Shown here in pieces: positions 8,109-49,833 of a stretch of DNA of 64,000 bases (within the stretch, counting starts at the first letter, position 1; every line of letters begins with the position of its first letter). A program made the translations under genes and the position numbers. The stretch lies in IMG/VR virus record IMGVR_UViG_3300020442_000005, positions 1 through 64,000 of that record, one strand, 5' to 3'. The notes below the pieces were generated by a model, which did not search any database, was not told where the DNA came from, and saw only the letters and a program-made list of their open reading frames with translations.

Positions 8109-8110
8109 AC

Positions 8111-20507: not shown

Positions 20508-20818
20508 TGTCTAAACTACGTGAAGAGATTGGTCGCAATTATAGTACGATTGACCTGGATTTTAACAAGCCATACAGCATGATGGACAACACCGACGTTG
20601 ACGTCAACATGTTTGCAATGGACAACGGTAAATGGTCAGCTGAAGTAAAATGCATAAGTAACCCAAAGCTATCAACGCACATGAGAATCTTTAATGACGA
20701 AGCATCTGCGAATCATTGGGCAAGAATGCAAGTCGATCGCATAACAAGAAAGACCATGAATGAAAGTAAAATACGATTAATGGTAAGAACTGTTCTAAAA
20801 GAGCATTTTAGCCTGTAA
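20507..20818 (+). CDS. Hypothetical protein; C-terminal leader-like motif NESKIRLMVRTVLKE
   Basis: TAATG coupling. Confidence 0.75.
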   Translation: MSKLREEIGRNYSTIDLDFNKPYSMMDNTDVDVNMFAMDNGKWSAEVKCISNPKLSTHMRIFNDEASANHWARMQVDRITRKTMNESKIRLMVRTVLKEHFSL

Positions 20819-20841
20819 AGTTTAAGCACGGCCATTATAAT
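20813..20841 (+). promoter_or_regulatory. Promoter CTGTAA-N17-TATAAT
   Basis: Perfect -10 box, 17-nt spacer. Confidence 0.7.
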
Positions 20842-22049: not shown

Positions 22050-22078
22050 GTGTAACCTGTATAACAACAAGATAAATT
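22050..22078 (+). promoter_or_regulatory. Promoter GTGTAA-N17-TAAATT followed by ATATATGTAA
   Basis: 16-nt identity with the preceding promoter's -10 region. Confidence 0.6.
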
Positions 22079-22122
22079 ATATATGTAAGAAGAAATCTTA
22101 CAGCTAACCTCTAGGAGACAAT

Positions 22123-25684: not shown

Positions 25685-25713
25685 AATGTCTCTCCCCAAA
25701 GAAATATGAAAAC

Positions 25714-34293: not shown

Positions 34294-35454
34294 ATGTCAA
34301 GTGTATTTTCGCATCACAAAACAGTTGCAGATCGATCTGCGTCTGATAGGCGGCGTCATAAGAAAAAAATAGAAGAAGCCATTAAGGATGGTATACACGA
34401 CATTGTCGCAGAAGAGTCTATTATAGGACAGGATGGGAAGAAAAAAATAAAAATTCCTGTTCGCGGTATTAAGGAATATAAGTTTGTATATGGTTCGAAC
34501 AATTCCGGAACAGGTGCCGGTGGCGAACATGACGTCAAAAAAGGCCAAGTTTTAAAGAAAGGACAGAAAAAACAGCAGCAAGGCCAAGGTGACAAACCTG
34601 GAAATCAGCCCGGGCAGGAATATTATGACGTTGAAGTCACACTAGAGGAATTGGCAGATTACCTGTTTGCTGATCTAGAGTTGCCAGAGCTAGAGAAAAA
34701 ATCATTAAAACAAATCGTTGCTGAAAAGTGGAAGCGTAAAGGATACAGACCGCAGGGCATAAGACCTAGACTTTCGAAAAAAGAAACAGCAAAGCAGCGC
34801 ATACGAAGAAAGAAAGCGGCAGAGCGCGCGTCTAGCATAGACCCAGATGAGCCGTTTTCATTTATCGAATCTGATCTGAGATACAAGCACATTACAAAAA
34901 CCGAGAAGAATATCTCAAACGCTGTAATATTTTTTATTATGGATGTATCCGGATCCATGTCAAAGGACAAGAAATATTTGGCAAGGAGTTTCTTCTTCTT
35001 GCTATATCATTTTATAAGATCGAAGTATGAAAAAACGGATCTAGTCTTTATAGCACATGATACTAGACCCTATGAGGTAGATGAGGACAAGTTTTTCAAC
35101 AGAGGTACTGGCGGTGGTACTATGGTATCTCCTACCTTGGAATATGTTTTAGAGGCAATCAATAAAAGATATGATCCATCAGCATGGAACATATATGCTT
35201 TCCATTGTTCAGACGGAGATAATTGGTCGTCCGATAACGACAAAACCTTAGAGCTGACGCTAAAAATAGCAGACATATGTCAATTGTACGGCTATTGCGA
35301 AATTGATCCGATGGAAACGGTTGCTTGGCTCAAATCCGACAACTCTCTAGGAGCGCTCTATGACAAAATACATTCAGTCAAATCAGCATTCATCAATTCA
35401 AAAAAAGACGTCTGGCCGGCCTTCAAAGAGTTTTTTGGAAAAACATCCAGTTAA
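34294..35454 (+). CDS. yeaH: YeaH/YhbH (DUF444) vWA protein
   Basis: DRRRH..KI, MDVSGSM, FIAHDT, GGGT.VS, YAFHCSDGDNW. Confidence 0.93.
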   Translation: MSSVFSHHKTVADRSASDRRRHKKKIEEAIKDGIHDIVAEESIIGQDGKKKIKIPVRGIKEYKFVYGSNNSGTGAGGEHDVKKGQVLKKGQKKQQQGQGDKPGNQPGQEYYDVEVTLEELADYLFADLELPELEKKSLKQIVAEKWKRKGYRPQGIRPRLSKKETAKQRIRRKKAAERASSIDPDEPFSFIESDLRYKHITKTEKNISNAVIFFIMDVSGSMSKDKKYLARSFFFLLYHFIRSKYEKTDLVFIAHDTRPYEVDEDKFFNRGTGGGTMVSPTLEYVLEAINKRYDPSAWNIYAFHCSDGDNWSSDNDKTLELTLKIADICQLYGYCEIDPMETVAWLKSDNSLGALYDKIHSVKSAFINSKKDVWPAFKEFFGKTSS

Positions 35455-35704
35455 AGAATCGACATTAGTAAGATTTGGATGGTATTACAGAAACAAACCC
35501 ATTCCGGATGATGAGACAAAAATAATTGGAGTGGTTTTAGATTCTCCAGAATGGAGATATTTTAGATACGAGAAGTTAAGTTTTTCAAAAGGAAAATGGT
35601 GTATTATTGAAAAAGAAGAGAACACATTAGTTGTTTGCGTTTATACACTGCATGGTGAGTTTGTATACTATCCATTATATAATTTGATAAAGGTTGAGGA
35701 ATGA
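35360..35704 (+). CDS. Small hypothetical protein inserted between yeaH and spoVR (true start uncertain)
   Basis: Fills the 35455-35708 gap; aromatic-rich. Confidence 0.55.
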   Translation: MTKYIQSNQHSSIQKKTSGRPSKSFLEKHPVKESTLVRFGWYYRNKPIPDDETKIIGVVLDSPEWRYFRYEKLSFSKGKWCIIEKEENTLVVCVYTLHGEFVYYPLYNLIKVEE

Positions 35705-35708
35705 AAAA

Positions 35709-36992
35709 ATGAGCGATTGGAATCTACGTGATCTTGAAAAATGGGATGAAGAGATTTGTAAAATAGCAAAGGACCATGGTTTAGATTGGTATCCAATAAC
35801 GTATGAAACATGCGATTATTATGAAATGATTGGCAACATGTCATACCACGGCATGCCGACACATTATGGCCACTGGTCATTTGGTAAATCTTTTGAGATA
35901 CAACATTCACAGTACCAGCATGGTGTGACTGGATTGCCTTATGAGTTGATTATAAATTCTGATCCTTGCATTTCTTACTTAATGCGTGAGAATCCACTAT
36001 ATTTACAGATATTGATTATGGCTCACTGCGTTGGCCACAGTGATTTTTTCAAAAAAAATCGAATGTTTGGATTTACCCGAGCTGATACAGTTGTACCGAG
36101 AATGAGAAACGCAAAAAAGAGAATTCAAAAATATGTCGAAGATCCATGGATCGGTATTGAAAAAGTCGAAAAAGTGATAGATGCCTGCCAAGCTCTTTCA
36201 TATCAGGTACCTAGGCACCCCAAAGACGTTGTTTCTCTTAAGGAAGAGTACGAAGCTGATAAAATAGTAAACAAAAAAGCAGAACTAGAAAAGCCACCAT
36301 ACAAAGAGTATGATATATTAGGGTTCGTGCTAGATTTTGCAACAGACTTGCCAGAGTGGAAAAGGGATATCATATCAATTGTTCGTGATGAAGCTTATTA
36401 TTTTATGCCGCAAATAAGAACAAAAGTTATGAATGAAGGTTGGGCATGTTTCTGGCATTACAAAATCGTACATGAACTGAATTTACCGCAAAAGTATCAC
36501 ATTCCTTTTTTAAAATCTCATAATCAAGTTGTAAGACCACACGTTGGAAGAATCAACCCTTATCATTTGGGCTTTCATTTGTTTAACAAAATAGAAGAAA
36601 GACACGGCCTGAAGGAATGTTTTATTGCCCGTGAAGTCCATAATGATGAGTCTTTTATAAGACAATATCTGACACAAGAAGATTGCGAAGAACTTAATCT
36701 ATTTTCATATTCTAAAAACGATATTAATGATTTAGTTGTCGACGAAGTATCAGACTATGATGGTTGGAAAACGGTTAAAAACAATTTAATAAACCAGATT
36801 GGTTCGAACTCAATTCCGGTAATTTATGTAGAATCGATCGAAAAAGACAATACACTAATACTACACCATGAACACGACGGACGTGACCTACAGATTCAGT
36901 ATGCTGAACATGTTTTAGAACATTGTAAACATCTGTGGCAATCTGATGTAAGATTAATAACAATGCTTGACGAAGCACCATACGAAATTTAA
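35709..36992 (+). CDS. spoVR: SpoVR/YcgB family protein
   Basis: GMP.HY.HWSFGK, LPYELIINSDP, AH..GHSDFF, TKVMNEGWA, NPY.LG. Confidence 0.95.
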   Translation: MSDWNLRDLEKWDEEICKIAKDHGLDWYPITYETCDYYEMIGNMSYHGMPTHYGHWSFGKSFEIQHSQYQHGVTGLPYELIINSDPCISYLMRENPLYLQILIMAHCVGHSDFFKKNRMFGFTRADTVVPRMRNAKKRIQKYVEDPWIGIEKVEKVIDACQALSYQVPRHPKDVVSLKEEYEADKIVNKKAELEKPPYKEYDILGFVLDFATDLPEWKRDIISIVRDEAYYFMPQIRTKVMNEGWACFWHYKIVHELNLPQKYHIPFLKSHNQVVRPHVGRINPYHLGFHLFNKIEERHGLKECFIAREVHNDESFIRQYLTQEDCEELNLFSYSKNDINDLVVDEVSDYDGWKTVKNNLINQIGSNSIPVIYVESIEKDNTLILHHEHDGRDLQIQYAEHVLEHCKHLWQSDVRLITMLDEAPYEI

Positions 36993-37003
36993 GGGAGCAA
37001 ATA

Positions 37004-38929
37004 ATGTCGTCTAATTTTTTAGATATTATTAAAAAACAAAGAAAAAAATCAAAGGACAAGAAGTTCGAGGGAACGTTTCTGGAATATCTAGAGCTAGTTC
37101 GTGAAAACCCAGACATCGCAAAGCATGCGCATAAAAGATTGTATGATGCTATAAGAAGCCAGGGAGTACGAGAAATTTCAGATGAAGATCCACGTAAACG
37201 AAAAATTTTCGATAACGAGGCTGTTAGAGTATATGAATACTTCGACAAAGAATTCTTTGGAATGGAATCGGTCATTGAAAAGATTATGCGTTTTCTTAAA
37301 GGAGCTTCCTTACGCGGTGAAGAGTCACGACAAGTGCTTTTGCTGATGGGACCGGTTGGAGCGGGTAAGTCTGCTTTGACAGAACATATCAAGTCAGCGC
37401 TGGATGGTTTATCTTACTACCATCTAAAAAATGATCCGCAGCGAGGAGAACCACTACAATTGTTGCCAAGGTCTCTTCGAAAGCAGTTTGAAGATCTGTT
37501 GAGTGTAAAGATCGATGGAGACATATCTCCTGTTGCAAGATGGAATCTCCTAAATGAATATAGTGGCAAATACGAGAACTTCGATGTAGTCCAGTCGACT
37601 TTTTCTCAAAGAGGGCGCCGCGGCATTGCCTCTGTTCCACCTATGGATGCAAATTCTCAAGACGTCTCTGTGTTAATTGGAAGTGAAGACATATCTAAAC
37701 TTGATAAGTTCTCTGAGGACGATCCTCGTGTGCTTAATCTAACCGGTGCCTTTAACGTTGGGAATCGGGGACTAGTTGAACTGATTGAGGTATTCAAGAA
37801 TGAGATCGAGTTTTTACACACTATTATTACGGCAACGCAGGAAAAACGCGTTCCTGCTCCGGGTAAGCATGATATGGTCTTCTTTGATGGTGTTATCCTG
37901 GCTCACTGTAATGAAAGCGAATGGAATCGATTTAAGTCAGAGCATACCAACGAGGCAATCCTGGATCGTGTTGTTAAGATCAACGTCCCATACGTGTTAG
38001 AGCTTGACCAAGAAGTAAAAATTTACGAAAAAATACTTTCAAAGTCAGACTTCAAAGCGCATATAGCTCCGCATACTATCAAAGTGGCTGCAATGTTTTC
38101 CGTCATGTCGCGACTTAAGTCAACCGGAAAATGTGACTTGCTAACAAAGATGAAAATCTACAACGGCGAAGACGTGATTGAAAAGGGTAGAGTAAAGAAA
38201 ATTGATATAATGGATCTGAAAGAGGAAGTCCGAGACGAAGGGATGACCGGCATCTCTACAAGATTTATATCAAAGGCAATTGACCACGCGTTAACTGATC
38301 ATTCTAAGCAATGTGTTACTCCTATCGGCGTGATGAAATCGCTCACTAAAATGGTAAAAGAGCAGATAGTTGATAATGACTTCCGTGAGCACTGCCTTGA
38401 AATCATTCAGAAGATTGTCAGAGAAGAATATCTTCGCATCCTAGAAACAGAGATTGCAAAGGCATTTATCACTGCGTATGAGGAACAAGCTCAGTCACTT
38501 TTTGACACTTATCTTGACAATGCAGAAGCCTATACGACTAAGAGAAAAATAAGAGATGATGTTACGGGCGAAGAAAGAAACGTCGATGAAAAGTTTATGA
38601 AATCAATTGAAGAAGTAATCGGCATCACTGGATCTTCTCGTCAAGGATTTAGATCTGATGTGACAGCTTACATGTTTGCAAAAATCAGGCACGGCGAAAA
38701 AGTCGATTATACTTCATATGAGCCGTTGAAAGAAGCAATCGAAGCATACCTTATAAACTCGGTAAAAGATATGGCTAGAATTGTTACTAAATCAAAATCA
38801 CGTGATGACGACCAAAAGAAAAAGTATAGCGATATGGTAGAAACACTTATTGAAGAATACGGATACAACGAACATAGTGCCGAAGAGATTCTACGTTATG
38901 CATCTAATAATCTTTGGAGAGATTCCTAA
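37004..38929 (+). CDS. prkA: PrkA/YeaG AAA+ ATPase (serine kinase family)
   Basis: FFGME.VIEKI, GPVGAGKS, G.FNVGNRG, EAILDR, GISTRF. Confidence 0.95.
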   Translation: MSSNFLDIIKKQRKKSKDKKFEGTFLEYLELVRENPDIAKHAHKRLYDAIRSQGVREISDEDPRKRKIFDNEAVRVYEYFDKEFFGMESVIEKIMRFLKGASLRGEESRQVLLLMGPVGAGKSALTEHIKSALDGLSYYHLKNDPQRGEPLQLLPRSLRKQFEDLLSVKIDGDISPVARWNLLNEYSGKYENFDVVQSTFSQRGRRGIASVPPMDANSQDVSVLIGSEDISKLDKFSEDDPRVLNLTGAFNVGNRGLVELIEVFKNEIEFLHTIITATQEKRVPAPGKHDMVFFDGVILAHCNESEWNRFKSEHTNEAILDRVVKINVPYVLELDQEVKIYEKILSKSDFKAHIAPHTIKVAAMFSVMSRLKSTGKCDLLTKMKIYNGEDVIEKGRVKKIDIMDLKEEVRDEGMTGISTRFISKAIDHALTDHSKQCVTPIGVMKSLTKMVKEQIVDNDFREHCLEIIQKIVREEYLRILETEIAKAFITAYEEQAQSLFDTYLDNAEAYTTKRKIRDDVTGEERNVDEKFMKSIEEVIGITGSSRQGFRSDVTAYMFAKIRHGEKVDYTSYEPLKEAIEAYLINSVKDMARIVTKSKSRDDDQKKKYSDMVETLIEEYGYNEHSAEEILRYASNNLWRDS

Positions 38930-39111
38930 TGACTAAAATTACGATAGGCATGCCTGAGTTTTTACTTGCATATAGTTTTTGTATGTACAACGTCTCATGG
39001 GGATTGTCCGTTTTAACGCTTACAATTGCGGTAATCAGCAGATTAGCAAGCACACTGGTGGATTATGGTGACAAAAAACAAGATGGTTTGGTCAGCGACC
39101 AAATCAAATGA
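38929..39111 (+). CDS. Small membrane protein
   Basis: TAATG coupling; hydrophobic core. Confidence 0.55.
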   Translation: MTKITIGMPEFLLAYSFCMYNVSWGLSVLTLTIAVISRLASTLVDYGDKKQDGLVSDQIK

Positions 39112-40297
39112 TTTCGAAAACATAGTTCATGATATAAAAAAGCTTTCCACTTCTGGAATATACTCATCACAAAACGTGTTTTTCAAGAACGATGTTTTTA
39201 ATTACATACGTTCCCTAGAGTCCGATTCAAGTCTGGACTATGCAAAAAGAAACATCATTCTTGATACACTGCTTTGCGCAAGAAAATACTCACCCGGAAC
39301 AGAAGTATTGTTGGCTGATATGATTGTATCAGCCGACTCTTATAACAACGAAAGAGTGTGTCGAATAAGTTCCGGCGAAGCTGCCAGTCTTACAAAGTCA
39401 AAGATTCAAAATCGGGAAGCCCAGCGTATATTTCAATCGATAGTTGATTTAATGGGTACTACTGGGCGTATTCATATCACTGAAGAACCCATCGCGTCAA
39501 CAGAGATTAAGCTCAGTGAAGGATGCGAAATAAACATTACGATAGACCATAGATTTGCGGCTCAGTCAAATGTAAAAAATATAAAATTTGATTTTGTTAA
39601 AGTATGCATTATTGAAGGCGCACCAGCTTCAGTTTCTGAAATAAATAAACTTCTTACTCACTGTCATGAAAACAACACGGTGCTTCTTCTGTTAGCAAGA
39701 TCTTTTCCAGAAGAAGTAATCAACACCTTATCAGTTAATTGGAACAGCAAAAAACTGAGGGTTATGCCCTACGTATATGGTGACAGCGTTTACAATATTA
39801 ATTCACACGCAGATCTCGCTGCGGTGTCCGGTGCCATTCCTGTATCGCAAATGTTTGGTGATTCACTGTCTTCAGATTTAACAGAAAAATTTGGTTCACT
39901 GTTGCAGTTTGTTAACCACGGAAAAAAAGTAACAGCCAGACCGACCTGTGATCCAAAAAGATTAATCAATGACTTAAAAACAAAATTGAGTAAGGTCGAC
40001 TGGTCAAATCATGACAGTGTTGAAATTATAACCAGAAGAATATCGGCATTATCAGACAAAACTTTGTATGTGAAAATTGCAAAATCACAAGAATCCTGGC
40101 GAATAAAAAATGAAGTAGATATTGCAATTGCTCAGTACAACAGCTATTGTAGGAAGACAATTGTCGTAAAAAGAAACGGAAAATTAGAAAAATTACCTTA
40201 TGACATTTACAAAAAAGCAACCGAACTGCAGAATACTTTTAGAACGCTGACAGAAAAAATAGGTGGCTTTATTGTTTACTGTGATAAAAAACATTGA
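39065..40297 (+). CDS. Divergent, shortened GroEL-like chaperonin
   Basis: IVDLMGTTGRIHITE..EIKLSEG ~ GroEL AMDKVGKEGVITVED..ELDVVEG; apical LLLLARSFPEEVINTLSVN; DLAAVSGA. Confidence 0.75.
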   Translation: MVTKNKMVWSATKSNDFENIVHDIKKLSTSGIYSSQNVFFKNDVFNYIRSLESDSSLDYAKRNIILDTLLCARKYSPGTEVLLADMIVSADSYNNERVCRISSGEAASLTKSKIQNREAQRIFQSIVDLMGTTGRIHITEEPIASTEIKLSEGCEINITIDHRFAAQSNVKNIKFDFVKVCIIEGAPASVSEINKLLTHCHENNTVLLLLARSFPEEVINTLSVNWNSKKLRVMPYVYGDSVYNINSHADLAAVSGAIPVSQMFGDSLSSDLTEKFGSLLQFVNHGKKVTARPTCDPKRLINDLKTKLSKVDWSNHDSVEIITRRISALSDKTLYVKIAKSQESWRIKNEVDIAIAQYNSYCRKTIVVKRNGKLEKLPYDIYKKATELQNTFRTLTEKIGGFIVYCDKKH

Positions 40298-41034: not shown

Positions 41035-41273
41035 AAAGATTAAATAAAAATGACGAATTAGAGATTGAAGACAGATCAAAAGCTAGAGAAATTATACAGG
41101 TAATTTTGGATTATGGAATCAACCAGAACCAAATTTATCACATGATTTATTTATTGGCTTTAGAGCTGGAAAAAGTTGACGACATGAAAGATATTACAAA
41201 GTTGGTAACAAAGTTAACAAACACAACAAACAACAAAACAACTGGTCTTATAACAACAGGAGATGAACCATGA
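41031..41273 (+). CDS. Hypothetical helical protein
   Basis: ATGA coupling on both sides. Confidence 0.7.
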   Translation: MKRLNKNDELEIEDRSKAREIIQVILDYGINQNQIYHMIYLLALELEKVDDMKDITKLVTKLTNTTNNKTTGLITTGDEP

Positions 41274-41467
41274 GTAATCCAGTAATTGAAAAATGGCAAG
41301 AGCTAAAAGTTCTTATGGAATCTATCGATTTAGATGTACATAAAAACGCAAACGGAAATGCATCCGCCGGCGTGCGTGCACGCAAAGGCCTAAGATTGCT
41401 TAAAACGCAAGCTGCAGATTTAGTTAAGCTTACTGTCGAATTAGACAAGGCAAAAAAAACTAAGTAA
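41270..41467 (+). CDS. Histone H1-like Hc1-family small protein
   Basis: GNASAGVRARK motif, basic, 65 aa. Confidence 0.75.
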   Translation: MSNPVIEKWQELKVLMESIDLDVHKNANGNASAGVRARKGLRLLKTQAADLVKLTVELDKAKKTK

Positions 41468-41519
41468 GACTAAGTTTTTAGTCTTTGCAAATAAATGGAG
41501 ATCTTTGATCTCCATTTTT
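41466..41519. terminator. Tandem hairpins / bidirectional terminator between convergent genes
   Basis: AAGACTAA-GTTT-TTAGTCTT and AAATGGAGATC-TTT-GATCTCCATTT. Confidence 0.85.
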
Positions 41520-41544: not shown

Positions 41545-41799
41545 CTAACAATCGATCTTGAATACGTACTCTCGTATTTTTTTAAGAGCAGATTTTTCAA
41601 TTTGGCAAATGCGCATTCTAGTTAAACCACATAAATCACCTATCTGCTGCAAAGTCCTAGGACCTTCTCGAGACGCAATGATCGTACAATTATTAAACTG
41701 TTTACATGCCATCCACTGTCGACAAGACTTGTTTTGGCATGATTTATTATTATTCAAATGCTCTTTGAAGCATGTTTTGTTATTTAAGACTTTATCCAT
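41545..41799 (-). CDS. Stand-alone sigma70 region-4 HTH protein with Cys-rich N-terminus
   Basis: RTLQQIGDLCGLTRMRICQIEKSALKKIR matches sigma r4 TLEE.G..F.VTRERIRQIE.KALRKLR; GGAGG RBS. Confidence 0.85.
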   Translation of the reverse strand: MDKVLNNKTCFKEHLNNNKSCQNKSCRQWMACKQFNNCTIIASREGPRTLQQIGDLCGLTRMRICQIEKSALKKIREYVFKIDC

Positions 41800-41822
41800 T
41801 CAAACCTCCGGATACAATATTA

Positions 41823-41851
41823 ATTGTAACCAGGAAAAACAATTTGTACGA
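41823..41851 (-). promoter_or_regulatory. Promoter TCGTAC-N17-TACAAT (minus strand)
   Basis: 17-nt spacer, upstream of the sigma-r4 gene. Confidence 0.55.
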
Positions 41852-41859
41852 GGAAAAAA

Positions 41860-43218
41860 ATGAGTAGAAAAATATTCGTTGTTGATACATCAGTTATGCT
41901 TTATGATAAGCTAGCAATTCATCAGTTTAATGGTAACGACATTGTACTACCACTTTGCATTCTGGAAGAACTCGATAAGTTCAAAGAAAAAAGTGGACTC
42001 CTTGGAGAATCCGCGCGATATGTAAATAGATACTTAGATGCACTCAGAGACTCTGAAAAAGATTCTGCGGCATGGAGCATCTCCCCAGAAAACGACATTA
42101 GATATAAATTTGTTACAAAATCATTAAAGTCTTTTATTCCGGAAGGTCTAGACACAAGCTACACAGACAATCAAATAATCGCATGCGCAAAATACTTAAA
42201 AGAAATGCATCCAAACAAGGTCGTCTTAGTTATCACTAAAGACATAAATCTTCGTGTAAAATGTGATGCTGTGGGTGTCGTTGCTGAAGATTATTTTAAA
42301 GACCACATTGAATCCGACGTAAAATCGTTGCGTGGCTATAGAGAGATAGAGGTAGATTCGACTGTTATCGATGAGTTTTACTCAGAGGGAAGTGTGAAGA
42401 TTGACTGTGAAGCCGATCAAAAAATAGAGGAAAATTGTTTTGTGATTGCAAAATCCAACTCTGGATCAGGTCAATCTTTTTTGGGAATCAACAAAGGTTC
42501 TAGTATTAAAAAACTAAACTATGAAATGAACGGCTTTATAAGTGTAGAGCCAAGAAATTCAGAGCAACGTTTTGCAATAGAGGCCTTACTTGATCCAAGC
42601 ATTTCACTTGTAACATTAACTGGCTTGGCAGGTTCCGGAAAGACTTTTTTGGCACTTATGGCTGGATTATACAAGTTACAAAACAGCAATCGCGGCGTAG
42701 GTGGTATCAAAATACCAGAAGAATTTGCTAACTTTTCAGACAATTATGACAGATTAGTAATTACTCGGACGTTGCAGCCTGTTGGTCGTGATTTAGGATA
42801 TTTACCTGGTAGCATGGAAGACAAAATGCAGCCATGGCTAATGCCCATACTAGATAACGTACGTCATGCATTTAAGGATATATCATATTTTAAAATGATG
42901 ATAGACAATGGCGAAATTGAAGTTGCTCCTATTCCATATATCAGAGGTCGTACTTTCACAAATTCTCTAGTATTGGTTGACGAAGCACAAAACGCAACAA
43001 TACATGAGCTCAAAACTATTATTACGCGTATAGGATCGGGATCAAAAATAGTATTACTAGGGGACATCGATCAAATCGATACGCCATATATTGACAGACA
43101 GTCTTCGGGTTTGAGCATAGTTATAGACAAGTTTCGTAATTCAAAATTGGCTGCTCACGTCAATCTGTCAAAAGGTCAAAGATCTGATTTGGCATCTGCC
43201 GCGGGTATGATTCTGTAA
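41860..43218 (+). CDS. phoH: PIN-PhoH ATPase (PhoH2/YlaK-like)
   Basis: VVDTSV, TKDINLRVK, GLAGSGKT, IRGRTF, DEAQN, GDIDQID. Confidence 0.93.
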   Translation: MSRKIFVVDTSVMLYDKLAIHQFNGNDIVLPLCILEELDKFKEKSGLLGESARYVNRYLDALRDSEKDSAAWSISPENDIRYKFVTKSLKSFIPEGLDTSYTDNQIIACAKYLKEMHPNKVVLVITKDINLRVKCDAVGVVAEDYFKDHIESDVKSLRGYREIEVDSTVIDEFYSEGSVKIDCEADQKIEENCFVIAKSNSGSGQSFLGINKGSSIKKLNYEMNGFISVEPRNSEQRFAIEALLDPSISLVTLTGLAGSGKTFLALMAGLYKLQNSNRGVGGIKIPEEFANFSDNYDRLVITRTLQPVGRDLGYLPGSMEDKMQPWLMPILDNVRHAFKDISYFKMMIDNGEIEVAPIPYIRGRTFTNSLVLVDEAQNATIHELKTIITRIGSGSKIVLLGDIDQIDTPYIDRQSSGLSIVIDKFRNSKLAAHVNLSKGQRSDLASAAGMIL

Positions 43219-43875: not shown

Positions 43876-46800
43876 ATGTCAAAAGATTTTAGAATCAAAC
43901 AATTGCGTACGACTCAGGTCATAGTATCGGGATCCGCTGTAGGAACTACCCCGAGTTTGCTAATTTATTCAGCATCGGCTGCAACCAATCTAGATGGAGG
44001 CGTTCATGCAGATTTGCTGACGTCAGTAGGAAAAGATGTCTGGATGTTTGTATCTGGTGCAAAAAACGACTCAGATCAGGCCCAAACGCTACACAGTGAC
44101 AAGATTTTATTCGGCGGTGACGTTGTTATATCGGGTACTCTATACGCTGAAAAACAAGTTTTAGAAGTTGATTATTCTCAAAAATCCGATCTTTTTCTAT
44201 CTGGCGCAATCGTATTCGGAGACCAAGGTGCCGCCGGCCAAGATGCTGGACAGGCAAGATTGCTAGAGTCGGTTGGTAACAATTCAGGTTCGTTGTTTAT
44301 ATCGACTGGATCTTTATATTTAGGCCTTAAATCATCCGGAAATTACGCAGAAACAGAGTTAACTCCTAAGGTTTATGTGGCCGCTAACGGTTTGGGAGAG
44401 CAAGTCGCGACTGCGACAAATACGTCTTTTAATCTAGATATTAACAATCTCACCGGATCTCTTACGCAGGCAACTATAGCTTCTGGTGATTTATTCGCAG
44501 TAGCAGATATTAATGCCGTAAATAACGAATCTAAAAAAATTACACTTGCAAACGTTGCACTTAAGCTTGCCGGCACCGGTTTAGAAGCGACGGATGGAGT
44601 GGTCGCAGTAGACCTGAACGATTCTGGCGCTGGAACGATCAATCTAACAAATGATAGTATTGTATTTATTGATGCAGATGATTCGAACGCAACGAAAAAA
44701 CAGACAATAAGTGCGGTTGCGACAGCCCAGGCCGGAGACGGAATACAGGCCACAAACGGTGTTTTTGCTGTTGACGTTTCTGATTTTGCTGGTGACGGAT
44801 TGTCCGATGACGGTTCAGAAAATTTAAAAGTCGATCTCAACTCGCTAGCCACATCCGCAGCAATTAACCAAGCAGATTCAATTGCGTTCATTGACTCAGA
44901 CAATGTAACTAAAAAGGGCACAATCGATTCTCTTGTAACGGCAATTGCAGGATCTGGATTATCAAACACATCAAGTCAGCTAGCTTTAACAAGTAACGAA
45001 GTGACTGTCACGGCTGGTGACGGACTAAAAGGAGGAGGTGGCGTCAGCCTCGGAGGTTCCGTAACAATAAACGTTGAACCCAATGATTTTGCTGGTACTG
45101 GCCTAGAAGATGACGGATCGGACAATTTGCGAATAGCCGCTTCAGCAGCGGGTGACGGTCTAAGCGGTGGAGGTGGATCTGCTCTTGCTGTCTCTACGGG
45201 AACTGGCCTTAAAATCGTTGGTGATAACGTCGCGACCGACGATAGTGTAGTTGCACATCTGACTGGATCAGTTTTTACAGGTGTTGTTCAGTTTGACAAT
45301 ACCGTAAATGTCGCAGCTGATATTGCACATGCTGGTGGCGATACAGACACAAAAATTACATTTAATACCGATAGAGTGACTGTAACTGCAGGAAATGTAA
45401 ATGCGATTGACGTTATTGAGGACGGTTCGAATTCAGAAGTGGTTATCAACGAAACTGGTGATGCTACAATGGATTTTAGGGTCGAAACAGACAATCTGCA
45501 AAAGGCAATCTACACTAATGCCGAAATGGATTATGTGACCATAGGGGATGACGTCGGCGTAAAACAGGACATGCATCTGTTTGTTTCGGGTACCATCGGA
45601 GGTGTCGGTACCGAAGGTGTCGCTGTATTCGGAGGCGACGTTGTAGTAAGCGGTTCATTACTTGATGGTAGTCATAATCCAATAAAATTGTTGTCCTACA
45701 ATGAAAACGGTACATTCACAACTCCTCCAAATGCCACCGGGACAAATGCCGTTGCGATAGGTAATAACGCTGTTGCTAGTGGAAACAACTCTATAGCAAT
45801 GGGTACAAGCACGACAAACCAAACAGACGCTACAGGGATTCACTCACTAGCGATTGGAGGTGACGATGCAACAGCTTCCGGCCAGTATGCTTCCGCGATT
45901 GGTGGTTATCAAAATACATCCAGTGGAAATTATTCCGTCACTATGGGTCGCGGGAACACAGCTTCGGAATCTGATGCAATTGCAATTGGTAAGTCACTAA
46001 CCGTTAATACCGCTGACACTATAGCTATTGGAAACAGTTCAGACAATGCATCCATACAACTAAAGGGCAACGTTGCTGTCGAGGGAACATCAACTTTGGA
46101 AGGAGACGTAACCCTTGGTAATACTGCTGATTTAATTATTCCTACGTTTATAAAACACAAATCAGATCTTAATACTTATATTCAGTATAACACTGACCGT
46201 ATAAGACTGGTTACTAATGGTGCAACAGATGTCGACATTACGACAAATCAGATTTTACTCACCCCTGGAGCTGACGGTACACCAACAGAATCAGCAGGTT
46301 TGGACGTCGCATTTTATGTCTCTGGTTCTGTCGCCACTCAAGGTACCACAGTCCGGGCAACATCACTCTTCGGTGGCGATGTGCACGTCTCTGGTTCTTT
46401 ATCTGGGCCTGACTCCTTTACTTTTGGAAACGATAACACAAGGATATTTAGAGACGGCAATAATCTAAAATTTGATGATGGCAACAACACAGTAAAAACA
46501 TTATCAGAACTAGCAACCGTTCCGGGCGAAGGTGCATTTATAAATGGCGTACACGGTGGTTCAAATAACTCTAAAGCCGCAACCTCAGCATCGTTTGCGA
46601 TTGCTGGAACTCAGGGTGCTAGCTTCTATACTGAAAACATCGGATCTGATGTTTTGTTATATGTTTCTGGTGGTTTAAGATCTGATACTGCTGCATACGG
46701 AAAGACCGCGGCCGTGTTTGGCGGAGCAGTTGTGTTCTCAGGTTCAGCAACATATCTTGGTGAAACTAGTTTTAACGTTATAGAAGCAACGACTGCAATA

Positions 46801-49800
46801 AAAACACCGTCGATACAAGATGCATCTGGAAACGAATCGATTAGAATTAATTCACAAAAAGTTGCGGTGGGTAATGCTATCAATGCAAATCCAAGTGCTA
46901 TATTTGAAGCTCCCCTAGCTGATAATACTCAGGCTGCAGCAACAAACGAAATTAGTAACTTTAACATCTTCCTAAACAACAGATCAGTACAAACAAATGC
47001 CTTTGCCGGAATAGGTTTCGATGTGTCGACAGAAGTCGACGCTGATTCTATTGGCGCTGCAATTAGAGCCGAAAGAGACACGTCGGCTAGTACCACGGCC
47101 GCAAATCACGCTACAAACTTGACATTTGCTACAAACCCAAATACCGGGGATGATGCTCTTACTGAAAGAATGCGTATTACTCATGATGGAAAGGTTGGTA
47201 TCGGTGTTGATCCAGGTTACGCTCTAGATGTTTTTGGTGACGTACGTATCCGTGGTAATGATTTAAGAGATAATAGTGGTGCAGTGTTTATCAGTGCAGA
47301 CGGCAGCGCAAACACAACCGTTTCGTTGGATCTTACTGTCGCCGGCGGTAATATTTTTGGACCACCCACCGGTGACTTAAACATTAAATCCGACGGAAAT
47401 CTTACTTTTGTCCTAGATAACGATAACAATGAAACGTCCCAAAGACTATTGGTTCAAAACACATCAAGCGACATATTTGAAGTAACTGAAGCGGGAGATG
47501 TTGTTGTTGGTAACGACTTATTCGTTTATGGCAACGATATAAAGGATTCCGGGGATCACACTGTGATCACATTCAACGGCCTAGGAGAGACGTCAATAGG
47601 TAACCTCACCATCACCGGTTCGAACTTGGTTGTTGGTCCAGATGCTGATGGCGCCGATCGATCTATTGTGTTTGGTCATTCTACACTAAAATCAATCATG
47701 GGTATTGACGACGATCAAGATGTGTTTGCCATTAATACTGATGCAACGTTCGAATCTGTAAATGATTTTGAGATAGACGCATCAGGTAACGTTACAATAG
47801 GTAATGGCGATCTTCAAATCGGCGGCGATGATATTAAGGATTCAGGTGGAAATATAGCAATATCCTTCGACGGATCTGGTGCCATAGACAACAACGCTTC
47901 TTTCAGCGGAATTGTTGAGTTTACACGTTCAGGGCCAGGTTCCAATCCTGCCTCTATTAAGTTGGCAAAAGGTATAGGTAGTACAGACGAAGCAACCACT
48001 TTAATAGCTGTAAATGGCGACTCTGGAAGAAATATTGAACTACTTCCCGCAGGCATTAACTTCTTGAAGTGTAAAAACCCATCTTCTAGTCAGAAAGAAA
48101 TTGTTATCAACGATGACAGCAGCGACATTGACTTCAGGGTTGAATCTAACGCCGAAACACACATGTTTTTTGTTGATGGCGGCACGGATAGAGTAGGTAT
48201 TGGTATAGACGGTCCAACGACTACGCTTGAGATTAAGGGAGCAAACGCTGACGAGACTGCAGTTCAGATTAAAGATTCTCAAAGCTCAGATACAATTATA
48301 AAACTACATCACGAAAACGGTGAAGACGACGGTGTACTCGATCTATACGTTAACGGGACTGCAAACACAAGATTGCATGGAAACGGTACATTGAGTGTTG
48401 CTTCTGGAAATCTAACGCTAGAAACTACTGGAACTGATTCTGATATTATTTTCAAAGTCGATGATAATACTACTGAGTTTACGGCGTTAACAATCGATGG
48501 ATCAGACCTCGGAAGTTTATTACATACTCCGTTGGATGGCGGCTCTTTGCAGGTAAACGACACCGGTACTGACGGTTTCTCCGAGGTTAATGGAAACGGT
48601 GGATTGAATCTATATAGATATTCAGACAGTGCTTCTTCGACAGCGACTGTTAATTTTTATAAGGCTCGTGGCAATGAATCATCACAATCAGCATTAAGCA
48701 CAGATGACACAATTGGATCGCTTACCTTCTTTGGTTACGATACCGCTGCATCTGCAGCTGCGCGTATACAAGTGAAAGCCGCGGATGCTCATGGATCTCT
48801 CGGTGATACAACAGACTCCCCAGGAAAGATATTATTCCAAACAGTTCCAAATGGTAGTAGCACACTAACAGACGCTCTATTAATTGGTTCTGACCAGTCA
48901 TCAACTATTTACGGTGATATATTTTTGCCACAGACAAGTACTATCGACACTACCGGTAACCTAACTATCGAAGCATCCGGAGACATCAAGTTTACGCATG
49001 ACGGTACTCAATTCATGCAGATTGAAGATTTCACCGGTGACGTTGCGATTGGATCACACGATCCGACCGTTAGGCTTGACGTTGAAGATACTACAACAGG
49101 CTACGTAGTTGAGTTTAATAACGGAAGTACATCTTCCGGATGCGATATGTTGCTGATGAAATTTACCGGTGTAGTGAATCCTGGAGGTACTATAATAAGA
49201 GCTATCGGCTCAGCCTCTGGCCAGGTATACGCAGTCAACGGCGACGGCGACGGTACCAGTACAGTGTCTACGACGTTTACCGGATTCCATGATACTGCAA
49301 CACTTTCCTCTGATGATCTAATACCTGGAATGATTGTTGAGTCGACTGGAATTCCTTGGGTTAAGGATCCGACAAATAACTACCATAATATGCTGCCATA
49401 TACTAGAATATGCGCATCAAACGGATCATCAACTGTTTTTGGTGTAACTGCAAAGGACAATGCGCTCGATATATATGACGAGAATGATGATAAAATACCT
49501 AATCCAAATTTGGGCGGACTAAGACCAGGATGCTTCCCAGCGCTTTCGACAAACAATCCAATGGCATCTAATCATGAACATCTGTCTGTTATGTCACTGG
49601 GCGAAGGTGCAATCTGGGTAACAAACATAGCTGGAAATATAACAAATGGGGATTTGATTGAATCGTCTGAGATCGCTGGTTACGGAAGATTGCAGCCTGA
49701 TGACATTATGAGATCTAAAACAGTTGCAAAGTGTACAGAAGCAATTGACTGGGATTCGGTCTCCGCAGTTATCGAACATAATGGCCAAACTTACAAAAAG

Positions 49801-49833
49801 TATTTGACATCCTGCACTTTCCATTGCGGTTAA
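43876..49833 (+). CDS. 1985-aa tail-fibre/adhesin-like protein with YadA-head-like repeats
   Basis: A.G.NAVAIG repeats (~45730-46040), repeated VSG..FGGD.V.SG.L modules, C-terminal GEGAIWV..GDLIESS..GYG..Q..TVAK..FHCG domain. Confidence 0.8.
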   Translation: MSKDFRIKQLRTTQVIVSGSAVGTTPSLLIYSASAATNLDGGVHADLLTSVGKDVWMFVSGAKNDSDQAQTLHSDKILFGGDVVISGTLYAEKQVLEVDYSQKSDLFLSGAIVFGDQGAAGQDAGQARLLESVGNNSGSLFISTGSLYLGLKSSGNYAETELTPKVYVAANGLGEQVATATNTSFNLDINNLTGSLTQATIASGDLFAVADINAVNNESKKITLANVALKLAGTGLEATDGVVAVDLNDSGAGTINLTNDSIVFIDADDSNATKKQTISAVATAQAGDGIQATNGVFAVDVSDFAGDGLSDDGSENLKVDLNSLATSAAINQADSIAFIDSDNVTKKGTIDSLVTAIAGSGLSNTSSQLALTSNEVTVTAGDGLKGGGGVSLGGSVTINVEPNDFAGTGLEDDGSDNLRIAASAAGDGLSGGGGSALAVSTGTGLKIVGDNVATDDSVVAHLTGSVFTGVVQFDNTVNVAADIAHAGGDTDTKITFNTDRVTVTAGNVNAIDVIEDGSNSEVVINETGDATMDFRVETDNLQKAIYTNAEMDYVTIGDDVGVKQDMHLFVSGTIGGVGTEGVAVFGGDVVVSGSLLDGSHNPIKLLSYNENGTFTTPPNATGTNAVAIGNNAVASGNNSIAMGTSTTNQTDATGIHSLAIGGDDATASGQYASAIGGYQNTSSGNYSVTMGRGNTASESDAIAIGKSLTVNTADTIAIGNSSDNASIQLKGNVAVEGTSTLEGDVTLGNTADLIIPTFIKHKSDLNTYIQYNTDRIRLVTNGATDVDITTNQILLTPGADGTPTESAGLDVAFYVSGSVATQGTTVRATSLFGGDVHVSGSLSGPDSFTFGNDNTRIFRDGNNLKFDDGNNTVKTLSELATVPGEGAFINGVHGGSNNSKAATSASFAIAGTQGASFYTENIGSDVLLYVSGGLRSDTAAYGKTAAVFGGAVVFSGSATYLGETSFNVIEATTAIKTPSIQDASGNESIRINSQKVAVGNAINANPSAIFEAPLADNTQAAATNEISNFNIFLNNRSVQTNAFAGIGFDVSTEVDADSIGAAIRAERDTSASTTAANHATNLTFATNPNTGDDALTERMRITHDGKVGIGVDPGYALDVFGDVRIRGNDLRDNSGAVFISADGSANTTVSLDLTVAGGNIFGPPTGDLNIKSDGNLTFVLDNDNNETSQRLLVQNTSSDIFEVTEAGDVVVGNDLFVYGNDIKDSGDHTVITFNGLGETSIGNLTITGSNLVVGPDADGADRSIVFGHSTLKSIMGIDDDQDVFAINTDATFESVNDFEIDASGNVTIGNGDLQIGGDDIKDSGGNIAISFDGSGAIDNNASFSGIVEFTRSGPGSNPASIKLAKGIGSTDEATTLIAVNGDSGRNIELLPAGINFLKCKNPSSSQKEIVINDDSSDIDFRVESNAETHMFFVDGGTDRVGIGIDGPTTTLEIKGANADETAVQIKDSQSSDTIIKLHHENGEDDGVLDLYVNGTANTRLHGNGTLSVASGNLTLETTGTDSDIIFKVDDNTTEFTALTIDGSDLGSLLHTPLDGGSLQVNDTGTDGFSEVNGNGGLNLYRYSDSASSTATVNFYKARGNESSQSALSTDDTIGSLTFFGYDTAASAAARIQVKAADAHGSLGDTTDSPGKILFQTVPNGSSTLTDALLIGSDQSSTIYGDIFLPQTSTIDTTGNLTIEASGDIKFTHDGTQFMQIEDFTGDVAIGSHDPTVRLDVEDTTTGYVVEFNNGSTSSGCDMLLMKFTGVVNPGGTIIRAIGSASGQVYAVNGDGDGTSTVSTTFTGFHDTATLSSDDLIPGMIVESTGIPWVKDPTNNYHNMLPYTRICASNGSSTVFGVTAKDNALDIYDENDDKIPNPNLGGLRPGCFPALSTNNPMASNHEHLSVMSLGEGAIWVTNIAGNITNGDLIESSEIAGYGRLQPDDIMRSKTVAKCTEAIDWDSVSAVIEHNGQTYKKYLTSCTFHCG

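What the first reader, a model, noticed from the sequence alone, without database searches (positions are those of the whole stretch)
41545..41799. Stand-alone sigma70 region-4 mini-protein with altered recognition helix and Cys cluster
An 84-aa lone minus-strand gene with its own TCGTAC-N17-TACAAT promoter and a double terminator. The recognition helix is TRMRICQ instead of TRERIRQ, which changes residues that read the -35 element in sigma70. The N-terminus has C10, H14, C21, C26, C32 and C38 (possible Zn/Fe or redox switch). With no region 2 it cannot be a sigma factor. Inference: a sigma-4 mimic that occupies the RNAP beta-flap or redirects -35 recognition, possibly to the TGTA promoter class.
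Basis: partly seen in the sequence, partly recalled or inferred. Interest (0 to 1): 0.72.

Follow-up and report, generated by a model that had tools for sequence, protein, structure and literature searches.

The report
Free-standing sigma region-4.2 mini-protein of jumbo phages
A conserved 84-residue jumbo-phage protein consists of a four-cysteine module fused to the promoter -35-reading helix of a sigma factor, in phages whose own sigma factor lacks exactly that helix; so promoter recognition may be split between separate proteins.

Summary
Window 41545-41799(-) is a real, strongly conserved 84-aa gene: 89 near homologues, 248 clusters at 50% identity, 250 IMG/VR loci. Only residues ~43-79 are sigma-like (region 4.2 helix-turn-helix). 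Residues 1-45 are a module with invariant C10/C21/C26/C38 (C-x10-C-x4-C-x11-C) that matches no solved fold. H14 and C32 are not conserved. The helix TRMR[IV]CQ is present in all 80 phage loci checked.

The window is the start of a 273-kb marine jumbo-phage record. Its only clear RpoD-like sigma (233 aa, at 206.8 kb) carries regions 1.2, 2, 3 and 4.1 and stops just before 4.2, as do 20/20 relatives. The mini-protein aligns to RpoD from exactly that point. All four ≥90%-complete genomes carrying either gene carry both. The mini-gene is always divergent from a PIN-PhoH gene. Its promoter belongs to a phage-wide class, TGTA(A/C)A-N16-TATAAT.

Best reading (confidence ~0.4): it is a trans-acting -35-reading subunit of a split sigma. 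Rivals: an autonomous regulator of the divergent promoters, with the 90-aa ORF next to the sigma gene as the sigma's true partner; or a region-4 decoy on RNA polymerase. Binding to the polymerase, to the sigma or to DNA, and the metal, remain untested. I rate it a new variant of a known kind.

The parts
41545..41799 (-). CDS of the 84-aa mini-protein (P0001); the stop codon is at 41545-41547
   Evidence: ORF and translation. Homologues: 89, 248 representative clusters, 250 IMG/VR loci. AlphaFold2 model with pLDDT 90.
41665..41799 (-). N-terminal Cys4 module, residues 1-45. C10, C21, C26 and C38 are invariant; F11, W29 and N37 are nearly invariant. Presumed metal site.
   Evidence: Alignments A1 and A2. 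Spacing is 10/4/11 in 79 of 80 loci. No match to any solved fold: PDB hits cover only residues 46-84. Whole-domain matches exist only in unnamed or viral clusters.
41548..41664 (-). Sigma region 4.2 helix-turn-helix, residues 46-84 (helices 50-57 and 61-83), with recognition helix TRMRICQIEK
   Evidence: Pfam Sigma70_r4 profile positions 16-50. RpoD_Cterm TIGR02393 positions 195-226 of 238. The top Foldseek hits are all sigma region 4 (39-52% identity, rmsd 0.5-1.8 A over 31-36 residues), though E-values are above 0.1 because the stretch is short. TRMR[IV]CQ occurs in 80/80 loci.
41823..41851 (-). Promoter of the mini-gene: -35-like (T)CGTACA at 41851-41845, a 16-17 nt spacer, and -10 TACAAT at 41828-41823
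   Evidence: Both blocks are invariant and the spacer varies in 7 relatives (A5). The same architecture is on the sense strand in 26/62 homologous spacers, against 2 antisense and about 1 in shuffles. TGTACA occurs in 19/62 against 2.3 expected.
41813..41828 (.). Inverted repeat TACAAT-TAAT-ATTGTA overlapping the -10; a candidate operator
   Evidence: Read directly from the sequence. It is only partly conserved in relatives, where the downstream arm reads ATTATA. It could be a chance occurrence in AT-rich DNA.
41805..41809 (-). Shine-Dalgarno sequence GGAGG, 5 nt before the ATG
   Evidence: Sequence; conserved in alignment A5.
41452..41517 (.). Two hairpins between the convergent mini-gene and the Hc1-like gene: a bidirectional terminator-like stem at 41493-41517, and a second stem at about 41467-41484 with a T-run at 41452-41459
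   Evidence: Terminator scan; RNA fold with z = -5.5.
41860..43218 (+). Divergent neighbour: a PIN + PhoH (PhoH2-type) gene whose start lies 60 bp from the mini-gene start
   Evidence: Pfam PIN_4 at 3.6e-27 and PhoH at 1e-48. Divergent in 80/80 loci and directly adjacent in 76/80. The arrangement also holds for a 40%-identical member.
20814..20841 (+). Example of the same promoter class in the window, TGTAAA-N16-TATAAT. Other examples start at 1251, 15806 and 28538.
   Evidence: Pattern counts in the genome are 16 on the + strand and 1 on the - strand, with 4 and 3 for the reversed-pattern control. The class is also present in relative G001.

Best explanation
The gene encodes a free-standing sigma region-4.2 subunit: a small Cys4 module, presumably metal-binding, holds a canonical -35-reading helix-turn-helix.

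The phage clade's own RpoD-like sigma keeps regions 1.2, 2, 3 and the 4.1 helices but ends just before the recognition helix. I propose that the mini-protein joins RNA polymerase carrying this truncated sigma and supplies -35 recognition in trans. That would be a sigma factor split inside region 4.

Its changed base-contacting residues (M62 and C65 in place of Glu and Arg) would give a new specificity. The most plausible target is the clade's TGTA(A/C)A -35 element, set 16 nt upstream of TATAAT, which also drives the mini-gene itself.

Shown here: the domain anatomy, the complementary domain boundaries, conservation, co-occurrence, and the existence of the promoter class.

Inferred, not shown: association with the truncated sigma or RNA polymerase, the DNA target, and metal binding.
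For: 1. The genome's only strong Sigma70_r2 protein (P0091, 233 aa) has regions 1.2, 2, 3 and the 4.1 motif LTKQEEMVLRLRFGI, and then stops.

2. All 20 aligned relatives, from phages with GC 34-58%, end 15-35 residues after the invariant RLRFG. Distant ones keep a remnant of the first HTH helix and stop right before the recognition helix.

3. The boundaries are complementary. On RpoD_Cterm (TIGR02393) the sigma covers positions 1-198 and the mini-protein 195-226 of 238. On phrog_351 they cover 481-697 and 683-726.

4. The mini-protein is the only Sigma70_r4 hit in the genome.

4a. All four genomes that are ≥90% complete and were found through either gene carry both.

4b. Five partial records with the sigma but without the mini-gene also lack its PhoH neighbour. 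So the region is simply unassembled there.

5. The recognition helix is invariant in 80/80 loci while the rest of the protein diverges to about 45% identity.

6. A phage-specific promoter class with a non-canonical -35 at canonical geometry exists. There are 16 sites on the + strand against 1 on the - strand, and the class recurs upstream of the mini-gene in 26/62 diverged relatives. A -35 motif shared by phages of very different GC argues for a phage-encoded reader.

7. There is precedent for split sigmas: T4 gp55/gp33, SPO1 gp33/34, SigO-RsoA and Tn916 Sig7-8 (bioRxiv 10.64898/2026.10.01.756105; PMC7892883).
Against: A conserved 90-aa helical ORF (P0092) lies directly downstream of the truncated sigma gene in every phage checked, with its own ribosome-binding site. 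8 of 31 of its members give weak Sigma70_r4_2 hits, best E 0.02. It is the more parsimonious partner for the sigma.

The mini-gene lies 165 kb from the sigma gene, on the other strand.

The Cys4 module seems to replace region 4.1 within a self-contained fold. The protein may therefore not need the sigma's 4.1 helices.

Related Cys4 + 4.2 proteins occur in a bacterial genome that has full-length sigmas and in other phages in a different gene context. The family's function therefore cannot depend on a truncated sigma.

Co-occurrence may only mean that both are core genes of the clade.

The exact TGTAA-N16-18-TATAAT pattern was not found in two distant members, G003 and G007.

There is no binding evidence of any kind.
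Confidence: 0.4

Rival explanations
1. It is an autonomous DNA-binding regulator. The Cys4-HTH protein binds TGTA(C/A)A-type sites or the TACAAT-N4-ATTGTA repeat in the 60-bp divergent spacer. From there it controls its own promoter, the PIN-PhoH operon, and possibly other TGTA sites. The truncated sigma's real partner is the adjacent 90-aa ORF.
For: The gene is divergent from the PIN-PhoH gene in 80/80 loci and directly adjacent in 76/80, with spacers of about 15-110 bp. This persists down to 40% identity. The spacer has conserved blocks and an inverted repeat over the -10. Three TTGTA motifs occur within 60 bp. The adjacent ORF90 gives weak region-4-like hits. Cellular homologues coexist with intact sigmas.
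Against: A single region-4.2 HTH binds DNA weakly on its own (established knowledge of sigma-70), and no dimerisation element is evident. The conserved blocks are equally well explained as an ordinary -35/-10 promoter of a genome-wide class. The inverted repeat is only partly conserved. Adjacency may be inherited synteny, because the whole block is syntenic. Another subfamily is not next to PhoH.
Confidence: 0.3
2. It is a sigma region-4 decoy or appropriator. It occupies the beta-flap tip of host RNA polymerase, or host -35 DNA, so that host sigma-70 cannot use -35-dependent promoters. Phage transcription proceeds with the 4.2-less sigma.
For: The fold is a bona fide region-4.2 HTH. Phages are known to target this surface: T4 gp33 clamps the flap-tip helix as region 4 does (PMC7892883), and AsiA remodels region 4 (PMC7824862). 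A phage sigma lacking 4.2 would be immune to such competition.
Against: Most of the flap-binding surface of region 4 comes from 4.1 and the C-terminal tail (my knowledge of holoenzyme structures). The mini-protein lacks both, since only profile positions 16-50 match. There is no homology to gp33 or AsiA. The invariant, altered recognition helix argues for a specific DNA target rather than mere occupancy. The beta-flap prediction gave no verdict.
Confidence: 0.15
3. It is a redox- or metal-gated switch. The Cys cluster is an Fe-S or redox-active site that turns DNA or RNA polymerase binding on and off. This is an add-on to any of the models above rather than an alternative.
For: Four invariant cysteines occur in 144 sequences. 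An extra invariant cysteine sits in the recognition helix of the phage subfamily.
Against: The spacing C-x10-C-x4-C-x11-C fits neither the WhiB-type nor the ferredoxin-type Fe-S motifs known to me. A structural Zn site is the commoner role for a Cys4 site in an 84-aa protein. C65 is an Arg in the canonical subfamily, so it is a specificity residue rather than a ligand. Nothing was tested here.
Confidence: 0.1

Closest known systems
Two-subunit (split) sigma factors: B. subtilis SigO-RsoA, Tn916 Sig7-Sig8, SPO1 gp33/gp34
   Same: Promoter recognition is divided between two polypeptides, one with a region-4-like HTH and one with region 2 (bioRxiv 10.64898/2026.10.01.756105). Here too, region 2 and the region-4.2 HTH lie on different proteins.
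   Different: The known cases split between regions 2 and 4, are ECF-like or phage-specific, and have adjacent co-transcribed genes. Here a group-1-like sigma keeps regions 1.2 to 4.1, and the break falls inside region 4. The 4.2 piece carries a Cys4 module and is encoded 165 kb away on the other strand. A second candidate partner (ORF90) sits next to the sigma gene. Function is unproven.
T4 gp55 + gp33 late-transcription system
   Same: A phage sigma lacking -35 recognition (gp55) works with a small separate protein (gp33) that sits where region 4 sits, on the beta-flap tip helix (PMC7892883; PMC2988020).
   Different: gp33 is structurally unrelated to region 4 and does not bind DNA by itself (PMC7892883). 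The mini-protein is a true region-4.2 HTH that retains base-contacting residues. No sequence or fold match to gp33 or gp55 was found.
Region 4.2 of primary sigma factors (RpoD/SigA), e.g. Taq sigmaA region 4 bound to -35 DNA (PDB 1KU7)
   Same: Identity is 39-52% and rmsd 0.5-0.7 A over the HTH. The equivalents of R584, R586, Q589 and E591 are conserved.
   Different: Regions 1-3, the 4.1 helices and the C-terminal tail are absent. E585 is replaced by Met and R588 by Cys. The N-terminal Cys4 module is not seen in any solved sigma.
'Minimal sigma factor' of group 2 jumbo phages (Iyer et al. 2021, PMC7824862)
   Same: That survey notes single-HTH sigma-like proteins and gp33 orthologues in jumbo phages that lack their own RNA polymerase.
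   Different: The paper, as searched, does not describe a Cys4 module, a sigma truncated before region 4.2, or this family. Whether its 'minimal' proteins include relatives of this one was not checked.
WhiB-like (Wbl) Fe-S proteins bound to sigmaA region 4
   Same: They combine a four-Cys cluster with sigma region 4. PDB entries of WhiB with sigmaA region 4 top the Foldseek list.
   Different: The match is to the sigma chain, not to WhiB. In Wbl systems the Cys protein and region 4 are separate molecules, whereas here they are fused. The Cys spacing also differs (my knowledge of Wbl motifs).

Membership tests
Sigma-70 family sigma factor | Region 2 (core binding, -10 recognition and melting) | tested here: not met
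   The 84-aa protein has no PF04542 hit. The genome's region-2 hits lie elsewhere.
Sigma-70 family sigma factor | Region 4 helix-turn-helix | tested here: met
   PF04545 at E 4.8e-10, above the cut-off, but covering only the 4.2 half, profile positions 16-50. PDB fold hits are to sigma region 4.
Split (two-subunit) sigma factor | Two polypeptides that together carry region 2 and region 4, neither complete alone | tested here: met
   P0091 has regions 1.2, 2, 3 and 4.1 but no 4.2. P0001 has 4.2 only. Their boundaries on the RpoD models are complementary.
Split (two-subunit) sigma factor | Genes adjacent or co-transcribed, as in SigO-RsoA and Sig7-8 | tested here: not met
   The mini-gene is at 41.5 kb on the minus strand and the sigma gene at 206.8 kb on the plus strand. 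The adjacent gene is ORF90 instead.
Split (two-subunit) sigma factor | Both subunits associate with RNA polymerase and both are required at the cognate promoter | not testable with these tools
   This needs pull-down and in vitro transcription experiments. The single complex prediction gave no verdict.
T4 gp33-like beta-flap coactivator | Homology or fold similarity to gp33 | tested here: not met
   No gp33 appears among the PDB or BFVD fold hits. tblastn against isolated phages found nothing.
T4 gp33-like beta-flap coactivator | Binds the beta-flap tip helix | tested here: inconclusive
   The complex job that included the E. coli beta-flap (residues 830-940) gave no answer.
WhiB-like Fe-S proteins | Wbl fold and Cys motif | tested here: not met
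   No Pfam Whib hit. No fold match to Wbl chains. The spacing of 10/4/11 differs from the Wbl motif as I know it.
Zinc-binding small DNA-binding protein (generic Cys4 + HTH) | Four invariant Cys positioned to chelate one metal ion | tested here: inconclusive
   Invariance is shown.
Antitoxin or regulator of a PIN-PhoH2 toxin (PhoAT-like) | Small gene upstream of phoH2 and co-transcribed with it (10.1101/2020.01.15.907535) | tested here: not met
   The gene is divergent, not co-directional, in 80/80 loci. One subfamily is unlinked to PhoH.

The most novel reading that the evidence does not exclude
Sigma in this jumbo-phage clade is a modular, multi-part factor. A common core (regions 1.2-4.1) pairs with exchangeable free-standing -35 readers. 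One is the adjacent 90-aa protein. The other is the distally encoded, separately timed Cys4 region-4.2 protein. Each would direct RNA polymerase to one of the two promoter classes that share TATAAT, namely TGTA(A/C)A and TTAAATTA. The Cys4 site would make the second reader responsive to metal or redox state. On this reading the phage's temporal programme runs by swapping a sigma sub-domain rather than a whole sigma.
Probability: 0.15. Interest if true: 0.9.

Novelty: new variant of a known kind. Interest (0 to 1): 0.7.

Why it matters
Sigma factors are usually treated as single polypeptides whose region 4 reads the -35 element. The few known split sigmas break between regions 2 and 4.

Here a whole clade of uncultivated 200-340-kb phages, marine and other, carries three things. 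One is an RpoD-like sigma cut just before the -35 recognition helix. The second is a widespread family (hundreds of clusters) of free-standing region-4.2 proteins with a new Cys4 module. The third is a promoter class with a non-canonical -35.

If the pieces work together, this would be a new way for phages to build and time promoter specificity. It would also be a compact, possibly metal-gated -35 reader of interest for synthetic transcription control. It would assign a function to a large uncharacterised protein family, now annotated only as 'Sigma-70 region 4 domain-containing'.

Even if the protein proves to be an autonomous regulator, the conserved 4.2-less sigma still needs an explanation.

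Tried and rejected
Complex prediction. Chains were the sigma C-terminus (residues 170-233), the E. coli beta-flap (830-940) and the mini-protein. The verdict was 'no answer': the score was 0.45 but a control scored higher.

Isolated phages. Megablast of the 10-kb region, and tblastn of the mini-protein and of ORF90 against INPHARED, found nothing. The sigma finds only RpoD-like genes at ≤41% identity.

Genome-contig scan. The pattern generated from the canonical subfamily matched ordinary rpoD genes, so it gave no taxonomy for the cellular homologues.

Naming the cellular homologues. Cluster look-up returned no names. Among 41 relatives of the bacterial genome that carries one, only 2 have the full-length protein.

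ORF90 as a diverged region 4.2. hhalign against the mini-protein family gave probability 0.3%. The PDB profile search and Foldseek on its model (pLDDT 74) gave no sigma hit. Only weak Sigma70_r4_2 hits remain. This is left open.

Transcription evidence. No RNA run holds this DNA. Laying relatives' metatranscriptome contigs gave only scraps of 30-160 nt without strand information, so transcription is not shown.

The second sigma-like ORF (G000:72783-73523) has no Pfam, PHROG, NCBIfam or PDB support beyond a 13.8-bit region-2 hit.

Rejected: C65 as a fifth metal ligand, because it is Arg in the canonical subfamily. Rejected: H14 and C32 as ligands, because they are not conserved. Rejected: a frameshift or assembly error as the cause of the sigma truncation, because there is a TAA stop, the next ORF has its own AGGAG ribosome-binding site, and 20/20 relatives are the same.

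Full report
WHAT IS THERE

The window is the first 64 kb of a 273-kb IMG/VR virus record, estimated 82% complete. GC is about 39%, and about 94% of the called ORFs lie on the + strand.

The minus-strand ORF at 41545-41799 encodes 84 aa. Pfam Sigma70_r4 matches above its cut-off at E 4.8e-10. The match covers only residues 43-77, which are profile positions 16-50, i.e. the region-4.2 helix-turn-helix. PHROG 351 'RNA polymerase sigma factor' matches residues 40-79.

THE GENE IS REAL AND BELONGS TO A LARGE FAMILY

- The word-indexed search found 89 proteins of about 72-103 aa at 45-92% identity. Several lie on 240-290-kb marine (Tara) contigs.
- An exhaustive HMMER pass found 248 clusters at 50% identity.
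- IMG/VR holds 250 confirmed loci.
- No isolated phage in INPHARED has it.
- The ESM-Atlas and AFDB neighbours that cover the whole domain are unnamed and, in the Atlas, viral.

In 144 aligned members only C10, C21, C26 and C38 are invariant, and N37 nearly so. The spacing is C-x10-C-x4-C-x11-C in 79 of 80 phage loci. H14 and C32 vary.

In the jumbo-phage subfamily R61, M62, R63 and C65 are also invariant. TRMR[IV]CQ occurs in 80/80 loci, although overall identity falls to about 45%. Other subfamilies keep the Cys4 module but carry other helices. One carries a fully canonical TRERIRQIEAKALKKL.

So the Cys4 module defines the family, and the recognition helix is its variable, specificity-bearing part. 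C65 is a specificity residue, not a metal ligand.

STRUCTURE

AlphaFold2 with 144 sequences gives pLDDT 90, with helices at 10-17, 39-43, 50-57 and 61-83.

The top Foldseek hits in the PDB are all region 4 of primary sigmas: mycobacterial SigA, and Taq SigA on -35 DNA (1KU7). They align over only 31-36 residues, at 39-52% identity and rmsd 0.5-1.8 A, and the E-values are poor because the stretch is so short. An independent all-against-all aligner also matches only residues 46-84, to region 4 of many sigmas, with Z ≤ 3.1.

The N-terminal 45 residues match no solved fold. The protein is therefore a region-4.2 HTH whose usual region-4.1 helices are replaced by a Cys4 module. Metal binding is inferred only from the invariance of the four cysteines.

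THE DECISIVE CONTEXT LIES OUTSIDE THE WINDOW

The genome's only strong Sigma70_r2 hit is a 233-aa RpoD-like protein at G000:206827-207528. It has regions 1.2, 2 and 3 and the 4.1 motif LTKQEEMVLRLRFGI. Fifteen residues later it ends at a TAA stop. The mini-protein is the only Sigma70_r4 hit in the genome.

The two proteins are complementary on the same models:
- On RpoD_Cterm (TIGR02393) the sigma covers positions 1-198 and the mini-protein 195-226 of 238.
- On phrog_351 they cover 481-697 and 683-726.

The truncation is not an assembly artefact:
- The top 120 homologues are 155-269 aa long.
- All 20 aligned relatives end 15-35 residues after the invariant RLRFG.
- This includes phages with GC from 34% to 58% and genomes of 200-340 kb.
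- The more distant ones keep a remnant of the first HTH helix (DYPITEEE...G.GLT) and stop exactly where the recognition helix should begin.

CO-OCCURRENCE

Of 14 large contigs found through the mini-protein, 6 carry the truncated sigma, including both that are ≥90% complete. Of 20 found through the sigma, 7 carry the mini-protein, again including both that are ≥90% complete. Five partial records with the sigma but without the mini-gene also lack its PhoH neighbour. The region is therefore simply missing from those assemblies.

This fits a functional pair, but equally fits two core genes of one clade.

A SERIOUS COMPETITOR FOR THE SIGMA'S PARTNER

Immediately downstream of the truncated sigma gene, with its own AGGAG ribosome-binding site, lies a 90-aa ORF (P0092). 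It is conserved in that position in all seven phages inspected (G000 and six relatives) and forms a family of 348 clusters.

Its model (pLDDT 74) is helical, with a disordered but highly conserved N-terminal peptide. It shows no significant similarity to the mini-protein family or to any solved structure. However, Sigma70_r4_2 is its commonest weak Pfam hit, in 8/31 members with best E 0.02, over the HTH part of the profile. It may be the diverged, split-off region 4.2 of this sigma.

LOCAL ANATOMY

The mini-gene is divergent from a PIN + PhoH gene in 80/80 loci. It is directly adjacent in 76/80, with spacers of about 15-110 bp. A 40%-identical member with a somewhat different helix keeps the arrangement. 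A more distant subfamily sits co-directionally in a different phage module without PhoH.

In the window the spacer is 60 bp. Across seven close relatives the blocks C(G/A)TACAA and TTACAATT are invariant, while the 14-15 nt between them vary freely.

The promoter belongs to a class:
- TGTA[AC]A-N15-17-TA[ATC]A[ATC]T occurs 16 times on the + strand of the genome against once on the - strand. The reversed-pattern controls give 4 and 3.
- The spacer is nearly always 16 nt, and 12 of the 16 sites lie just upstream of gene starts.
- The class recurs in the closest large relative.
- The looser pattern [TC]GTA[AC]A-N15-17-TAnnnT is found on the sense strand in 26/62 unique mini-gene/PhoH spacers from diverged phages. 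The antisense strand has 2, and shuffles give about 1.

Read with a 17-nt spacer, the -35 hexamer is TTGTA(A/C) rather than TTGACA. Canonical TTGACA-type promoters are rare in the genome. A second AT-rich upstream motif, TTAAATTA(A)TTT with TATAAT, also recurs, and one copy precedes the sigma gene.

Downstream of the mini-gene, two hairpins fill the gap to the convergent Hc1-like gene.

HOW IT MOST LIKELY WORKS

The HTH keeps the fold-determining and backbone-contacting residues of region 4.2, and two of the four base-contacting residues (the R584 and Q589 equivalents). It invariantly replaces the other two: E585 by Met and R588 by Cys. This mapping uses my knowledge of the 1KU7 complex and of sigma-70 genetics. 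So it is built to read DNA, but not TTGACA.

Hydrophobic Met and Cys would suit thymine methyl groups in an A/T-richer element such as TTGTAA. This last point is inference only.

Three observations fit together:
- the sigma lacks exactly this helix;
- the clade shares a non-canonical -35 motif at canonical spacing;
- split sigmas have precedent.
The precedents are T4 gp55/gp33, SPO1 gp33/34, SigO-RsoA and Tn916 Sig7-8 (bioRxiv 10.64898/2026.10.01.756105). In addition, T4 gp33 clamps the flap tip as region 4 does (PMC7892883).

The best single explanation is therefore a trans-acting -35-reading subunit. I put this at about 0.4, for four reasons. ORF90 is an equally good or better candidate partner. 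The Cys4 module may make the protein self-sufficient. Homologues exist alongside full-length sigmas in a bacterium. And nothing was measured.

The main rival, at 0.3, is an autonomous regulator acting on the divergent spacer, which contains a TACAAT-N4-ATTGTA repeat over the -10 and three TTGTA motifs. A redox or metal switch could be layered on any of these.

COMPARISON WITH KNOWN SYSTEMS AND NOVELTY

The protein is not a sigma factor, because it has no region 2. It is not a gp33 or AsiA homologue, not a Wbl protein, and not a PhoAT-type co-transcribed antitoxin.

It works most like the region-4 subunit of a split sigma, but differs from the known ones in four ways. The break lies inside region 4 of a group-1-like sigma. 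The protein carries a Cys4 module. Its gene sits at a distance on the opposite strand. A second candidate subunit exists.

A survey of jumbo phages mentions 'minimal' single-HTH sigmas and gp33 orthologues but, as searched, not this arrangement (PMC7824862). Full-text searches for truncated or region-4-less phage sigmas found nothing relevant.

I therefore rate it a new variant of a known kind, with interest 0.7. A specialist in phage transcription would find the clade-wide 4.2-less sigma plus the stand-alone Cys4 region 4.2 surprising, and the idea is directly testable. The mechanism, however, is still inference.

Noticed in passing
window 9008-9366 (+): The phage carries a one-piece tmRNA gene with tag peptide ANNNDNFEVALAA. 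Rfam RF00023 scores 114.7 bits.
   Followed up: partly
window 34294-38929 (+): YeaH/DUF444 (34294-35454), SpoVR (35694-36992) and PrkA (37004-38929) lie in a row. This is the bacterial PrkA-YeaH-SpoVR triad inside a jumbo phage, and it is conserved next to the mini-gene block in many relatives (PrkA in 41/80 loci).
   Followed up: partly
G000:206827-207820 (outside the window; L002:1399-2392): An RpoD-like sigma lacking region 4.2 (233 aa) is followed by a conserved 90-aa helical ORF with its own ribosome-binding site. The ORF has a highly conserved N-terminal peptide (MSMPKG.K..GYATV) and belongs to a family of 348 clusters with no Pfam assignment.
   Followed up: yes
G000:72783-73523 (outside the window; L003:1282-2022): A 246-aa ORF gives a marginal Sigma70_r2 hit (13.8 bits, E 0.013) and has a C-terminal HTH-like stretch. 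It may be a second, very divergent sigma-like factor. It has no support in Pfam, PHROGs, NCBIfam or the PDB.
   Followed up: partly
window 41270-41467 (+): A 65-aa Hc1-like (chlamydial histone H1-like) protein, Pfam E 1.7e-8, is convergent with the mini-gene. It is present in 73/80 related loci.
   Followed up: no
window 15828, 34232; genome 109348, 134391, 191405; L002:1340-1380: A second recurrent upstream motif, TTAAATTA(A)TTT, lies about 20-25 nt before TATAAT-like hexamers. One copy precedes the truncated sigma gene. It is a possible second promoter class.
   Followed up: partly
window 22076-22102 (-) and genome 247429-247455 (-): Two nearly identical minus-strand elements read TGTAAG(A/T)TTT.TTCTTACATATATAAT. 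Each is a small inverted repeat followed by TATAAT, lying in a genome that is otherwise almost entirely + strand.
   Followed up: no
window 30197-31357, 22123-23223, 24947-25699, 39065-40297, 43876-49833: Auxiliary genes: serine hydroxymethyltransferase, a MoxR-like AAA ATPase, a minus-strand trypsin-like peptidase, a weak GroEL-like 410-aa protein (a full GroEL also lies at about 205.4 kb), and a 1985-aa fibre-like protein with YadA-head repeats.
   Followed up: no
L091 (bacterial MAG contig, gene at 8001-8297): A cellular member of the Cys4 region-4.2 family has a fully canonical RpoD recognition helix. It sits 3 nt upstream of an EngB-like GTPase gene and after a 5-kb stretch with no called genes. 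The 1.9-Mb genome has full-length sigmas. Only 2 of 41 related genomes have the gene.
   Followed up: partly
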